Assembly: GCF_963853765.1 (NCBI RefSeq)
Contig: NC_088858.1
Location: 30,690,001-30,754,000, forward strand
Length of the DNA stretch: 64,000 nt
Source: Magallana gigas
Lineage: Eukaryota
Reading direction: 5' to 3'
Shown piece by piece: positions 15,665 through 30,214 of this stretch. Within the stretch, counting starts at the first letter, position 1; each line of letters opens with the position of its first letter. The position numbers were made by a program, and so were the translations under genes. Below the pieces are notes generated by a model, which worked only from the letters and a program-made list of their open reading frames with translations, was not told where the DNA came from and made no database searches.

Positions 15665-17284
15665 TTCTGCAACCATACAGATTTTGGCTTTGAATGAAAG
15701 TTTTAAGGCAACAGTCTTGATTATAGTCAATTTGACCAAAGTTGATGATGATGAAAGTCGGTATTATATTTGTTTCCAAATGAAGAAATATCTTTTTTTT
15801 TCTGTGTATTCATTAATATGAATTACAAAGACATGATTAATTAATAAACACACGTTCTGAGAGGTATAATTATCTAGCGATATCTCATTAATTTACGAAT
15901 AAGAAATCATTTTAATGATGAACATGGAACTCAAATGAGAATGACTTAAGGTCATAAAGTATTTTCATAATCTTTATGATCAAATATTTCGTTAACTTAT
16001 AAGAGATCACGCAATAGAACTATGTTTTACATTGCATGCCTCCCTCTACTCAAGCATTTGGAAAGTGCAAGATTCCTTACTTGTCAAAACTGCCGAATTT
16101 GCACAATAATGTCCACGTGATATCTTAAGCTTAAAAAAGATTACGTTAAAATGGAGATTTCATTAGAAACCATGTTTTTATTATCTTTCTATTGAAAGAT
16201 TATATGAACGACTATATAAGCGAAAGAAAGGGTTGATTTAGACACAAAGATTTAAGTTAGGTAAATGAGTTGATGATATTTGGAATGTAGAGGGAATGTA
16301 CAAATGAACATTAAATTTTACGTAATATTGTTGTCCGTACAGAATTGACATTTGTTTTCGGTAGATTATACAGTATCGGGGAGTCTTGTAGAAACAACAA
16401 AGAATATACGACAAACAAGCTTTAAAAAAGCGTTAAATAGTTAATTATAGTAACTTCTACATATGGAAAATCGGCCCCTCCCTCTATGGACTATAGAAGA
16501 TATCTATATTGTGTGATTTTATATTTGCTTTATCCAGGGAGCTAAAATAAATAATATTTTCGCGAGGCATAAGACGCGAATATGAACCGACACCATTTCA
16601 AAGAGAAATTAACATAAAATCACACAATAATCTCATATAATTTGACATATATTTTATAGTTTTTGGAGAGCTTGAACTTCACGGACTTGCACGGGCTAAC
16701 CTCCGAGTTCCGTGTAGCCGTAGTAACCATGGTAACCTTCACATGTATGGAAAATTGAATGTTCCTTTCTGTAACGTAGTGATCGACGTTAAAAATGCTA
16801 GTAATTCACATACTGAAATTACTCATTTTTTATGGATAATAAAACAGATGTAAATATACAGTAATCAATATCGTGTTTCACCGTTATTTTATAGTGCTCT
16901 TTTTGAGTTATGAAGGCTAACGTGGGTTATGCATTCTTTTTTCTGCAATGGCAATGCAAGCTACCTTCATATCTATACAAAATACCATTTTAGAAAGCAT
17001 TTTATTGTTTACACCCACCCCAGATATTTTTTCATCTGTATATGTACATCAACAACGTGTTTTTACGGAAGCCCTGGGAGGACATTGACTTACTTTTTAA
17101 TTATTATGAGCCCTGGAAGGACATATTAACTTACTTCTTAAGTTACGACTTATTCATTATGACTTAATTGTTATTATTTGATTAGACTGTTTTAAATTTC
17201 AAGCTCAGATCATGTAAAACGTGCTCAAAGAATTTTACGGATTAAAAGGGGAACAAAAAATAAAAGCCTTAATTATTATAGTTG

Positions 17285-17850
17285 TTTGCAACCTCTTTTT
17301 CGATTCCATTCAAATGACTGGTGTTAAACATTTTATGTACTTAGTACATTGTAAAAGTATGTCAAACCAAAGAAAAGAGGCGTAGTAAGTTCTAAGAAGC
17401 TTGGGATTCATTGTTGGATTAATCTATTTAAGGATATCGAGGATACTAGAATGTTCAACTTGGACAATCAAGTTGTGAAAGAGTGTCTGTGACTTTGCTT
17501 CACGCACGCCTTTCACACTGATTTGGATAGAATAGCAAGTCACAGGAATTCTCATAAAATTCGGCCACAGAGAGGATATGCTGAACTGCCTTAATTCTGG
17601 TAAACCAGATGTCTTGTATTTTGTGCCTGAACTGACTGACGGACAAACACCTTAAAACACCTGTGAATGCTGAAGATGTTAACGTTTGTATTACATGTAC
17701 ATGTAATTTGTATGGAAAGAAGAGTAGTGTAGAGGTCATAAAGCTTGTGAACTTATAATGTAATTAAACCCGTTGTTCAAATCCCAGTTCATTCCTATGA
17801 ATCTTTGGAATTATTCATTGAATTGAATGACGTTCTCAAAGACTACGTAT
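17285..17850 (+). pseudogene. Decayed DDE/rve integrase-core transposase C-terminal fragment
   Basis: Frame-broken pieces read SMSNQRKEA, IHCWINLFKDIEDTRMFNLDNQVVKECL*LCFTHAFHTDLDRIASHRNSHKIRPQ, SGKPDVLYFVPEL and ELFIELNDVL. These match the GKS.SNQRIE.WW...W.N.F.D...ECL.FCF...LD.....WN.H.IR...GKPD.LY..PE pattern I recall for marine-invertebrate integrase-core transposases. Confidence 0.8.
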
Positions 17851-26984: not shown

Positions 26985-29019
26985 GTACTGAAGAACTGAA
27001 GGGAGTTGATTTTGTCGATGTTTATTTATTTTAAAATCATTGAAACGTTATTTTGCAAGACAAGTACATGTAGTTTCTAATTTGAATTACGCACATTTTT
27101 ATAATATGAATTTTTGGACTTTTTCGACAAGAATGTCGAGAAACCCCCATATGAATTATGTTAAATAATATTTAAAAATATAATTGATTCAATCAAACTA
27201 TGTATCAGTAATAGAAATATTTCTCGAAAATTGTATTGATCCAAGCAATATTACAATCTAGTCTCGTTCAACCAAACGCTCGGCTGACACCGTAAATCTC
27301 CTACAAGCAAGAGAGACTCGATCTCTGCTTGTCGGAGATCTACGGAGACAGCCGAGCGTCGAGTTGAACGAGACTATATTGAACTCTGGCGTAGGAATAC
27401 ATTTAATCTAAATAAGATTGAAAATTGATGCTAAGCATAAAAACTATAAATAATACATGCATTATTTTTTAATCATTTTTATTTTTAAAGACAAAATACA
27501 TATGCCAATATCTATACCTTTTCAGACATCCATTCAATTGAATTGAAATGCTTATTGACTTGGACTGTCATCACTCTCTTAGGTATGAAGACCTTCTTTA
27601 TGAGGGGTATCTAGAATCATGTTTAAACACATGCTTATAGGGTACTTTGGCAAAGAAAGTCTTAAATGTTCGGGTTTCTAATCCTGAGACTGGAGCTGAT
27701 TGTCGTAGAGATGAAAAATTAAAATAAAATAAGAAAAAACTGGAAAATAACAAAATGAACAAATAAGTAATAAGAATTAATAAATAATCAGTAATTAAAA
27801 GAATAAGTATTAACAGTTAAGAAATGCAAATTAACAAGCAAGTATTAAGTAATAGGAGGTAAGTATTAAACATTAATAAATAACAAGTAAGTATTAAATA
27901 ACAACAAGTAAGTAATAAGTACATGCAAGAAACAAGAAGTATATACATGTAGCTCAAGTCCTTCATATGTACCACAGTTTTGATTTGATTGGCTCTATGT
28001 TATGAAGGAAGCATTAGATACATAATGTAATTTGTAGTGTCGAGAAAAGGGAGTAGTAATTGCTAAATTATTATGATTTATGCTATCTAAACATGTGCGG
28101 AAAAGAATAACACGGATAGTTTAGTTTTATGCCCTGTTTATTTGCAGCAGTAACAAAATTAATGATCTGAAATGCCCTTGAACAAGTAATGAAACAGAAA
28201 ATATTTTGGAAACAATGCCATTGAAAATGTTCTACACACACGAACCAAATAATTGTACTAATTTTTTGTGATTTGTTAATACGTAGTCTTTGAGAACGTC
28301 ATTCAATTCAATGAATAATTCCAAAGATTCATTGGGATGAACTGGGATTTGAACACCGGGTTTTATTAAGTTCACAAGTTCTTTGAACTCTTTACTACGA
28401 GTTTCTTTCTTCTTTCCATACAAATTACATGTACATGTAATACAAACGTTAACATCTACCGCATTCACAGGTGTTTTAAGGTGTTTGTCCGTCTGTCAGT
28501 TCAGGCACAAAATATCTGTGGCCGAATTTTATGAGAATTCCTGTGATTTGCTATTCTATCCAAATCAGTGTGAAAGGCTTGCATTAAGCAAAGTCACAGA
28601 CACTCTTTCACAACGGGGTTGTCCAAGTTGAACATTCTAGTATGCTCGATATCCTTAAATAGATTAATCCACAAATGAATCCCAAGCTTCTTAAGAACTT
28701 ACTACGCCTCTTTTTCTTTGGTTTGACGTACTCTTACCATACATAAAATGTTAAACACCAGCCATAGAGTCATTTGAATGGAATCGAAAAAGAGGTTGCA
28801 AACAGCTATAATAAGGCTTTTATTTTTTGTTCCCCTCTTAATCCGCAAAACTCTTGGAACACGTTTTACATTATCTTAGCTCGAAATTTAAAACAGTTTA
28901 ATCAAATAATAACAATTAAGTCATAATGAATAAGTCGTAACTTAAGAAGTAAGTCAATATGTCCTTACAGGGCTCATAACAATTAAAAAGTAAGTCAATG
29001 TCCTCCCAGGGCTTCCGTA
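26985..29019 (-). mobile_element. IS3EU-like transposon copy B (inverted, lacking the inner end)
   Basis: Reverse complement of 17064-19325 with substitutions and indels. Minus strand reads HFMYGKSTSNQR at about 28750-28715. I found no inner TIR. Confidence 0.8.
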
Positions 29020-30214
29020 TGTTTTTGTTTTTTGTGTTTGGGGGTTTTTTTGCTTGGTTTTTTTTTTTTTTTGGTTTTTTTTTTTTTTTTTTGTAAAACG
29101 CCCGTCCGTATGAAACAGAACATTTTCCGATTTGCAACAACAACAAATTAATTAATAACCCACTTCCAATAAAGAATATTAATTGAAAAAAAAAACCAGA
29201 CAACTTGTTTATAGACAGCTGACATAAATACATGTATACTACAATTAGATATAAAGATGGCGGTGTGTGCGTCAAGTTAAAATTCCTGACGGTTTTTTTT
29301 TTGTATTAAAAAACTAATAAGTCATCATCTCTATCAACAAAGAAACGATGGCACAATGTACAGTATTTAGTTTGGCTATAGCAATAAACAAAAAAACATT
29401 TTAAAAATCTATGTGCAGTTCAGCAATTTAAGTAATGGTTATTCCATTAAGCATTCTTTCCCTTTGATCATGGTTTTCTCTGATGAATTCTTTTCCAATT
29501 TTTTATCTTTACAATGATTACCTTTGGTCATCAAATTGTTCCATTGGTTTTTGCTTCCACTAAAAACAATTAGATATGAAGCTCGGTTCAATATACCAGC
29601 GAGTTACTTTGTCCATGCAAGCTCCGAGAGAGGACCCACGTCATGGCTATGATTCTATTACATGCTATGAAACTGAGAATTTTACTTCTGTAGTAGCTTA
29701 ATATCAAAATGCACACGTATAATATATTTTGTGAAATATACATTGTGATTTTATTCATCTTCTCTTATCTGTCCATTCGCCGATTGTAATTCATAAAATG
29801 TTTATGAAATTTGTGTTTGGTGAGTTGTACGACTTAAGGCTTACCATTTTAAGAATTAAAATGGTTTGGATGTATGAACAGAAAAAAAAGAGTTTGATTG
29901 AAAATGTCATTTCCAGGCAGAGTGGTATACAAACGGTACGTGTCATTGAGATAATACCGGGTATATTAGGTAATATTTACATCTTTCAGTGTTTTGTCTG
30001 TGATTACACTACGAATCGATTTAGTACTGTACAGCCCAATAAATTAAAATGACGTACTGTCGGGACACAAGCGGGGTTTTCATTATTAATTAATATTCTA
30101 ATATTTAATCGTTCAGTTAAATATATATTTATTAAGGAACCATTCTTTGAATATTATACTGCTATAATTTTGGTCGGGGCGTGACCAAATCTATCATAAA
30201 GCCAACCAGGCTTT

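What the first reader, a model, noticed from the sequence alone, without database searches (positions are those of the whole stretch)
17058..29025. Bacterial-style composite transposon in an animal: two inverted IS3EU-like elements bracket an intact cGAS-like immune receptor, with a matching 6-bp flank
Seen: the outer ends are perfect inverted termini (TACGGAAGCCCTGGGAGGAC at 17064; GTCCTCCCAGGGCTTCCGTA ending 29019). Each is flanked by the identical hexamer TGTTTT, whereas copy A's own inner end (20330) is followed by ATTATT, which does not match. Both ~2-kb arms carry integrase-core remnants, and the middle holds a 2-kb intact Mab-21 gene. Known: as I recall, IS3EU eukaryotic transposons have TAY...RTA ends and 6-bp TSDs, and composite transposons (Tn10-like) move cargo using the outer ends of two IS copies. 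Inference: the 12-kb unit was inserted here as one piece. That would give a transposon-driven route for the large expansion and presence/absence variation of cGLR genes in bivalves. Caveat: the right flank is T-rich, so a chance TSD match is possible.
Basis: partly seen in the sequence, partly recalled or inferred. Interest (0 to 1): 0.9.

Follow-up and report, generated by a model that had tools for sequence, protein, structure and literature searches.

The report
Transposon pair carrying a cGAS-like gene
In an oyster chromosome, one complete and one truncated copy of the same small cut-and-paste transposon face outwards around an intact cGAS-like immune gene, and a matching 6-base duplication outside both ends suggests the 12-kb block arrived as one piece, a "macrotransposon" of a kind known in maize but rarely seen in animals.

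Summary
The sequence observation holds. The 20-nt terminus TACGGAAGCCCTGGGAGGAC occurs only three times in the window, at 17064(+), 20330(-) and 29019(-). TGTTTT flanks both outer ends, while copy A's inner end is followed by ATTATT.

This family makes strict 6-bp target-site duplications elsewhere in the genome: five of five complete pairs are perfect and a sixth matches 5/6. The cargo's homology to its closest paralogous locus on another chromosome starts about 9 bp from A's inner terminus, and sequence outside the unit has no homology to that locus. Together these give the same diagnostics used for the maize White Cap macrotransposon.

Three corrections apply:
- The arms are non-autonomous and show no integrase remnant in Pfam.
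- The right arm is a truncated 1.6-kb left-end fragment fused to a truncated high-copy repeat.
- None of at least 150 other Mab-21 loci lies near a terminus of this family, so this is a single event, not a general route of cGLR expansion.

No empty site could be read; public contigs give only hints of presence/absence. The IS3EU label rests on TA..TA ends and the 6-bp duplication alone, because no transposase was found. My verdict is probable macrotransposition (about 0.6), a new member of a known kind.

The parts
17058..17063 (+). Left copy of the putative 6-bp target-site duplication, TGTTTT
   Evidence: Read directly. It matches 29020-29025. The family makes 6-bp TSDs.
17064..20330 (+). Element A. 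This is a complete non-autonomous TIR element of 3,267 bp, or about 2.6 kb without its nested repeat. It has TA..TA ends and 62-nt TIRs (17063-17124 / 20270-20331, 92%). Each end carries two copies of the motif GCCCTGG[GA]AGGACAT.
   Evidence: It is collinear with other family members such as C5:39782892-39785737 (86-88%). It has no Pfam domain and no TSD of its own (TGTTTT versus ATTATT).
18675..19328 (+). Nested 654-bp high-copy repeat inside A, with no TIR or TSD and a palindrome at its 5' end. It is absent at this position from arm B and from other family members, so it inserted after A and B split.
   Evidence: Loose ends at 18675 and 19328, and depth above 10^5.
20331..26977 (+). Cargo segment of 6.6 kb. 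20339-20696, 21808-23997 and 24011-26639 are homologous (78-92%) to C7:18829469-18834769, which carries no family termini.
   Evidence: Homology starts about 9 bp after A's inner terminus. The flanks of the C7 locus do not match the window outside the unit.
21926..23971 (+). Intact single-exon Mab-21 / cGAS-like gene of 681 codons (first in-frame ATG at 21935). NTase motif G64-S65, D76-x-D78 and D177.
   Evidence: It is 87.8% identical in amino acids to the C7 paralog, with dN 0.064, dS 0.105 and omega 0.61.
26112..26368 (.). Roughly 257-bp MITE with 36-nt inverted ends inside the cargo. The C7 paralog has it at the same position, so it predates the cargo/C7 split.
   Evidence: (I18).
26978..27402 (-). 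5'-truncated copy (positions about 240-654) of the same 654-bp repeat family, 80% identical to A's copy. It forms the irregular inner junction of arm B.
27404..29019 (-). Arm B, a truncated left-end fragment of an A-type element (equivalent to A 1-1611 plus A 2267 to about 2304). It is 94.0% identical to A's left arm. Its outer terminus is intact (20/20) and it has no inner terminus.
29020..29025 (+). Right copy of the putative target-site duplication, TGTTTT, at the start of a T-rich tract

Best explanation
The 11,956-bp block 17064-29019 is a macrotransposon, that is, a eukaryotic composite transposon.

Inferred sequence of events:
1. At a donor locus paralogous to C7:18.83 Mb, two sister copies of a non-autonomous TA..TA element family with 6-bp TSDs came to lie in inverted orientation on either side of a single-exon Mab-21/cGLR gene.
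2. The family's transposase, supplied in trans, synapsed the two outward-facing left-type termini. Their first 55 nt are nearly identical and each holds two copies of a 15-nt motif.
3. The transposase cut out the whole block and integrated it into a TGTTTT target on chromosome piece C6, duplicating the hexamer.
4. The inner part of arm B was lost in a deletion that fused it to a truncated high-copy repeat, either before or after the move.

Shown: the anatomy, the 6-bp TSD rule of the family, the matching outer hexamers, the absence of A's own TSD, and the cargo's paralogy ending at A's inner terminus.

Inferred: the donor arrangement, the transposase, and the single integration event.
For: - There are three termini only, in the required outward-facing configuration.
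- Five of five complete family pairs elsewhere have perfect 6-bp TSDs, and a sixth has 5/6.
- The outer flanks are TGTTTT/TGTTTT in direct orientation, with a chance probability of about 5e-4 to 2e-2.
- Complete element A has no TSD of its own.
- Cargo homology to C7:18829469-18834769 begins about 9 bp from A's inner terminus. The C7 flanks, and the window flanks outside the unit, share nothing.
- A and B are each other's closest relatives (94%, against 72-91% to other copies), as local hopping at a donor would give.
- No second copy of the unit or of its internal junctions exists, as cut-and-paste predicts.
- All other family members held are ordinary L..R elements, so this L..L block is exceptional rather than a family design.
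- Hints of polymorphism come from public contigs. One contig stops exactly at 17064. Another continues past 17064 with 10 unlike letters. Two runs have a near-identical left flank but 0 and 0.83 depth on cargo-unique 21201-21400. Two oyster runs of about 650 Mb of contigs hold 0.00-0.02 of the cargo-unique words.
- The same three diagnostics established the maize Wc macrotransposon (bioRxiv 10.1101/082677).
Against: - No empty-site allele or orthologous empty site was read, and the loose letters at 17064 were not shown.
- This is a single event, with no other TSD-bounded L..L unit in the genome.
- No donor site or footprint was found, and no autonomous transposase was identified, so end compatibility (L with L) is assumed.
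- The right flank is T-rich with a tandem TGTTTT TGTTTT, which raises the chance of a coincidental match to the percent range locally.
- The ragged inner end of B needs an extra deletion.
Confidence: 0.6

Rival explanations
1. Capture by aberrant gap repair. A single B-type element first inserted at this TGTTTT site. After its excision or breakage, the left end copied only the shared TIR and then switched template to an ectopic A element next to a Mab-21 gene. Synthesis ran through A and about 6.6 kb of its flank. The new strand was then end-joined to the remaining B arm, so the TSD dates from the first, simple insertion.
For: - It explains the irregular right inner junction (truncated repeat fused to truncated B with 0-3 nt of filler) as an end-joining scar.
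- It explains why the cargo starts exactly at A's inner terminus.
- It needs only one element at the donor.
- The TIRs of left and right ends are near-identical for about 55 nt, which would allow the template switch.
Against: - It requires about 10 kb of ectopic repair synthesis.
- Copying is non-destructive, so a donor with the A-R|ATTATT junction should persist, but none exists in this assembly.
- The switch must fall within the first 30-55 nt.
- It does not explain why A and B are sister copies.
Confidence: 0.13
2. Two independent insertions, A and B, into a pre-existing local gene region, followed by rearrangements that removed A's right TSD and B's inner half. On this reading the TGTTTT match is coincidence in T-rich DNA.
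For: - The right flank is T-rich, and TGTTTT occurs twice in its first 12 bases.
- B is demonstrably rearranged.
- This is only one instance.
Against: - It needs a 6/6 match (5e-4 to 2e-2), plus a rearrangement breakpoint exactly at A's inner terminus, plus the cargo/C7 paralogy boundary landing on that same terminus.
- The left flank outside the hexamer is not T-rich.
- Recombination between inverted copies cannot change the outer flanks.
Confidence: 0.15
3. Assembly artefact: a false inverted duplication or misjoin.
For: Long inverted repeats are a known failure mode of assemblers. No listed public contig bridges 17064 with 31 or more letters on both sides.
Against: - The arms differ at 6% of sites and by 20 indel events, and only A carries the nested repeat.
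- There are no Ns.
- Independent runs hold A's unique part and the cargo at 100% identity, and one contig crosses the A-R/cargo junction (27 + 140 letters).
- Cargo-unique words are held by runs from 8 studies.
Confidence: 0.03

Closest known systems
Maize White Cap (Wc) macro-transposon formed by two Tam3L (hAT) elements (bioRxiv 10.1101/082677), and Ac/Ds macrotransposition (Huang & Dooner 2008, as cited there)
   Same: - Two copies of one cut-and-paste family bracket host genes.
- The intact boundary element lacks its own TSD.
- Sequences on its two sides are not contiguous elsewhere.
- The outer ends share one family-length TSD.
- The result is a gene relocated to a new locus.
   Different: - Here the TSD is 6 bp with TA..TA ends (IS3EU-like, not hAT).
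- The elements are inverted and use two left-type ends.
- One element is truncated.
- The donor is not retained.
- The host is an animal (a bivalve) and the cargo is an immune cGLR-type gene.
- There is no empty-site confirmation yet.
Bacterial composite transposons (Tn10/Tn5 type; from general knowledge)
   Same: Two IS-like copies in inverted orientation mobilise the DNA between them through their outer ends, and a single TSD flanks the whole unit.
   Different: The arms here encode no transposase, so the enzyme must act in trans. One arm is a fragment. This is a eukaryotic chromosome.
[quoted passage not shown]
   Same: TA..TA termini and 6-bp TSDs, the two structural hallmarks stated for complete IS3EU families.
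   Different: No IS3-like DDE transposase was linked to these termini, and all copies seen are non-autonomous elements of 2-3 kb.
Gene capture by repair synthesis (Pack-MULE-type transduplication, filler DNA in Ds elements; from general knowledge)
   Same: Host DNA ends up between intact termini under a single TSD.
   Different: Captured pieces are usually short fragments, not a whole second element plus a 6.6-kb locus with an intact gene.

Membership tests
Macrotransposon / composite transposon | Two copies of one TIR family bound the unit, with intact termini facing outwards | tested here: met
   Termini are 20/20 at 17064(+) and 29019(-). The arms are 94% identical and inverted. The right copy is truncated internally.
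Macrotransposon / composite transposon | One TSD of the family's length flanks the whole unit, while the inner end of the boundary element has no matching TSD | tested here: met
   TGTTTT/TGTTTT outside and ATTATT at A's inner end. The family's 6-bp rule holds at 5/5 perfect plus 1 at 5/6.
Macrotransposon / composite transposon | The cargo derives from another locus and its homology ends at the element boundaries | tested here: met
   Paralogy to C7:18829469-18834769 starts about 9 bp from A's inner terminus. The outside flanks are unrelated. The right boundary is blurred by 338 bp of unique DNA plus the truncated repeat.
Macrotransposon / composite transposon | An empty site with a single copy of the target in another haplotype or species | tested here: inconclusive
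   - There is no paralogous or haplotig empty site in the assembly.
- Public contigs only hint at one: a contig ends at 17064, and another carries 10 unlike letters after it.
- The metagenome scans were blank, but that collection does not hold this flank either.
IS3EU/GingerRoot superfamily | TA..TA termini | tested here: met
   TACGG...CCGTA at all termini. The criterion comes from PMC10045372.
IS3EU/GingerRoot superfamily | 6-bp target-site duplication | tested here: met
   CATGTC, TGTACC, CAAAAT, ACTGAT and GAATTG are perfect, and GTTATG/GTTATC matches 5/6.
IS3EU/GingerRoot superfamily | An IS3/integrase-like DDE transposase encoded by autonomous members with the same termini | tested here: inconclusive
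   - There is no Pfam hit in A's frames.
- There is no ORF of 110 aa or more of that kind in the 1.5-kb ends of 10 other copies.
- None of the 150 rve_3 hits falls inside any terminus pair.
- The interiors of the 8.7-kb and 10.8-kb pairs could not be fetched.
cGAS-like receptor (cGLR) / Mab-21 nucleotidyltransferase | Mab-21 NTase and C-terminal helical domains | tested here: met
   Pfam Mab-21 2.5e-10 and Mab-21_C 5.8e-13. PDB hits are MB21D2 8e-11, cGLR1 3e-9 and cGAS 1e-7.
cGAS-like receptor (cGLR) / Mab-21 nucleotidyltransferase | Complete active site: G-S, [DE]x[DE], and a third acidic residue | tested here: met
   G64-S65, D76-L-D78 and D177 are conserved in all 11 paralogs aligned. D177 aligns with the third-acid region of MB21D2 and cGLR1.
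cGAS-like receptor (cGLR) / Mab-21 nucleotidyltransferase | Ligand-activated synthesis of a nucleotide second messenger | not testable with these tools
   This needs biochemistry.

The most novel reading that the evidence does not exclude
The unit is a young, still mobilisable IS3EU-type macrotransposon that is present in some oysters and absent in others, and it has carried a catalytically intact cGLR between chromosomes. That would be the first natural case in an animal of a pattern-recognition receptor gene relocated by paired cut-and-paste elements. It would also give a concrete mechanism for some of the dispersed, presence/absence-variable cGLR copies in bivalves.
Probability: 0.2. Interest if true: 0.75.

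Novelty: new member of a known kind. Interest (0 to 1): 0.5.

Why it matters
Bivalves carry hundreds of cGLR genes (more than 200 in some species; PMC9980059), and how such immune gene families disperse across chromosomes is poorly understood. If this reading is right, it documents one concrete relocation of a whole, intact cGLR gene by a pair of DNA transposons. It would extend macrotransposition, so far best documented in plants, to an IS3EU-like family in an animal. It also yields a directly testable presence/absence marker. It does not show that transposons drive the expansion in general, because no other Mab-21 locus tested sits next to these termini.

Tried and rejected
- Integrase remnants in the arms. 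The ten longest frames of A were scanned against Pfam at E<=10 and gave nothing, so this claim is rejected.
- Shared nested repeat as proof that B was copied from A. This is rejected. B is 'empty' at A's repeat site and carries a separate truncated copy about 40 bp further in.
- Inverted (foldback) duplication of arm plus flank. This is rejected because the right flank is TGTTTT, not the reverse complement AAAACA.
- Inversion by recombination between A and B. This is rejected because it cannot alter the outer flanks.
- Other large terminus pairs as further composites. The 6.1-kb and 5.1-kb pairs are ordinary L..R elements with nested insertions, one of them a LINE RT.
- Fetching the 8.7-kb and 10.8-kb pairs and more of the C7 locus.
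- Autonomous transposase by rve_3 genome scan. All hits lie elsewhere, mostly in frames over 1,000 aa typical of retrotransposon pol.
- Paralogous or haplotig empty site. None was found.
- Empty-site pattern in metagenome contigs. The scan was blank, but the flank-only control was blank too, so this is uninformative.
- Reads. Logan contigs were too short and repeat-broken to bridge the junctions. Shares of words are confounded by haplotype divergence.
- Earlier scan notes on this genome gave no lead on the family.
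Full report
**Observation**

The window is G000:C6:30690001-30754000 of a 564-Mb assembly. Public runs that hold it are labelled oyster.

The 20-nt terminus TACGGAAGCCCTGGGAGGAC occurs exactly three times in the window, even allowing up to 3 mismatches: at 17064(+), 20330(-) and 29019(-), with 0 expected by chance. 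TGTTTT lies immediately outside both outer termini (17058-17063 and 29020-29025). The inner terminus at 20330 is followed by ATTATT. The unit has no Ns.

**Anatomy of element A**

Element A (17064-20330, 3,267 bp) is complete, with 62-nt TIRs. Each end carries two copies of the motif GCCCTGG[GA]AGGACAT, at positions 8 and 47.

A contains a nested 654-bp repeat at 18675-19328. That repeat has thousands of copies in the genome, no TIR and no TSD, and a 5' palindrome (depth above 10^5).

**Anatomy of arm B**

Arm B (29019 down to about 27404) corresponds to A 1-1611 followed directly by A 2267 to about 2304. B is therefore empty at A's repeat site. Its homology to A then stops and it is fused, with 0-3 nt of filler, to a 5'-truncated copy of the same repeat family (27402-26978, 80% identical to A's copy). 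The remaining roughly 960 bp of an A-type element, including the inner terminus, are absent.

The A-left and B arms are 94.0% identical over 1,562 aligned bases, with 20 indel events.

**The transposon family**

The genome has 33 such termini, mostly in pairs 2-3 kb apart.

- Of the pairs whose flanks I hold, five have perfect 6-bp TSDs (CATGTC, TGTACC, CAAAAT, ACTGAT, GAATTG). A sixth, older pair has GTTATG/GTTATC.
- All held members are collinear with A, with one left-type and one right-type arm. The 5-6-kb pairs are such elements with nested insertions.
- No member shows a transposase-like frame. A's ten longest frames have no Pfam match at E<=10.
- None of 150 rve_3 matches in the genome falls within a terminus pair.

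TA..TA termini with a 6-bp TSD are the stated structural hallmarks of IS3EU (PMC10045372).

**The cargo**

The frame 21926-23971 is an intact 681-codon single-exon gene with Pfam Mab-21 and Mab-21_C. Its closest solved relatives are MB21D2, cGLR1 and cGAS. It has a complete G64-S65 / D76xD78 / D177 motif set, shared with all 11 paralogs aligned.

At least 40 paralogs at 79-92% DNA identity, and at least 150 Mab-21_C loci with mostly 600-790-aa open frames, show the large expansion known for bivalves (PMC9980059).

The nearest relative lies on another chromosome piece, at C7:18829469-18834769:
- the gene is 92% identical in DNA and 87.8% in amino acids, with dS 0.105 and omega 0.61;
- both flanks are homologous at 78-89% over about 6.3 kb;
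- the two loci share a MITE at 26112-26368.

That locus has no family termini.

**Why a single-piece insertion is favoured**

1. The family obeys a 6-bp TSD rule, and the outer ends of the unit obey it perfectly. The chance of this is 5.5e-4 for two random hexamers of the window, 1e-3 for TGTTTT, and about 1.7% if the local T-rich composition is assumed.
2. The complete element A has no TSD of its own.
3. Cargo homology to the C7 locus begins about 9 bp from A's inner terminus. The 980 bp upstream and 1.5 kb downstream of the C7 homology match nothing outside the unit. The window flanks match nothing at C7.
4. The right flank is not the inverted copy of the left flank, so a foldback duplication is excluded. 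Recombination between inverted copies cannot change outer flanks.
5. A and B are each other's closest relatives, as expected from local hopping at a donor.
6. No second copy of the unit or of its internal junctions exists, as cut-and-paste predicts.

Points 1 to 3 are the same criteria that established the maize White Cap macro-transposon: the boundary element lacks a host-site duplication, its two sides are non-contiguous in the reference, and the outer ends share a matching duplication (bioRxiv 10.1101/082677).

**What is missing**

I could not read an empty site. The assembly has no paralogous or haplotig version of the flanks. Metagenome scans were blank, but the flank-only control was blank as well.

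Public Logan contigs are short and broken by repeats. They give hints only:
- In run X15 a 560-nt contig ends exactly at 17064, where a filled/empty branch would lie.
- In X9 a 413-nt contig matches 16662-17064 and then carries 10 letters unlike the element. The letters were not displayed.
- X11 and X8 have a near-identical left flank but depths of 0 and 0.83 on the cargo-unique bin 21201-21400, against 7.4 (X15) and 8.3 (X9).
- A contig in X9 crosses the A-R/cargo junction.

Cargo-unique words (21201-21800) are held by runs of two organism labels from 8 studies, while two oyster runs of about 650 Mb of contigs hold 0.00-0.02 of them. Word shares are confounded by haplotype divergence, so I treat presence/absence polymorphism as likely but unproven.

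**Rivals**

The main rival is capture by aberrant gap repair into a resident B-type element, through a template switch in the shared TIR to an ectopic A and read-through into its flank. It neatly explains the ragged inner junction of B. Against it, it needs about 10 kb of ectopic synthesis and a surviving donor, which is not seen. I give it 0.13.

Independent insertions plus coincidence need three coincidences (0.15). An assembly artefact is unlikely given the diverged arms and the independent contigs (0.03).

**Scope**

None of the 40 closest paralogs or the 150 best Mab-21_C loci lies near any of the 33 termini. This is a single relocation, not evidence for a general transposon-driven route of cGLR expansion.

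**Verdict**

It is a new member of a known kind (a macrotransposon, here IS3EU-like, in a bivalve, with an immune gene as cargo). Interest is moderate at 0.5, and the claim is directly testable by PCR or long reads across the site.

Noticed in passing
window 18675-19328; also L004-L030: A 654-bp repeat with thousands of copies at 93-96% identity. It has no TIRs and no TSD. It starts TTTTTGGGAGTTGATTTTAATCAACTCTCC (a palindrome) and ends CAGTACTTCAGTACTTTGATT. It looks like a non-autonomous rolling-circle (Helitron/Helentron-type) element, but this was not classified.
   Followed up: partly
genome-wide, e.g. C6:21.40-21.68 Mb, C10:16.40-16.63 Mb, C9:3.67-3.70 Mb: At least 150 scored (386 candidate) Mab-21_C loci, most inside uninterrupted frames of 600-790 aa and often in tandem clusters. 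This is a very large family of single-exon cGLR-like genes whose C-terminal half of about 340 aa has no Pfam match.
   Followed up: partly
G000:C5:39779978-39785737 (L003, L052, L053): Two members of the same transposon family lie 61 bp apart in the same orientation, each with its own TSD (ACTGAT; GTTATG/GTTATC). This is the kind of closely linked pair from which a macrotransposon could form.
   Followed up: partly
window 26112-26368; related copies at 9468-9724, 34794-34976, 62043-62300, 24508-24734: A roughly 257-bp MITE with 36-nt inverted ends, present in many genomic copies at 87-90% identity. The cargo copy is shared with the C7 paralog.
   Followed up: partly
window 20601-21200 (palindrome 20947-21054): Another very high-copy repeat (contig depth 10^4-10^5) lies upstream of the Mab-21 frame. 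The C7 paralog has only 177 bp where the window has about 1.1 kb (20696-21808), so this material was inserted after the two loci split.
   Followed up: no
The globin said to lie upstream was not checked.
   Followed up: partly
window 21201-21800: Runs labelled with a second organism code ('organism B') hold about half of the cargo-unique 31-mers. The cargo, or the whole unit, may therefore predate a species or subspecies split.
   Followed up: no
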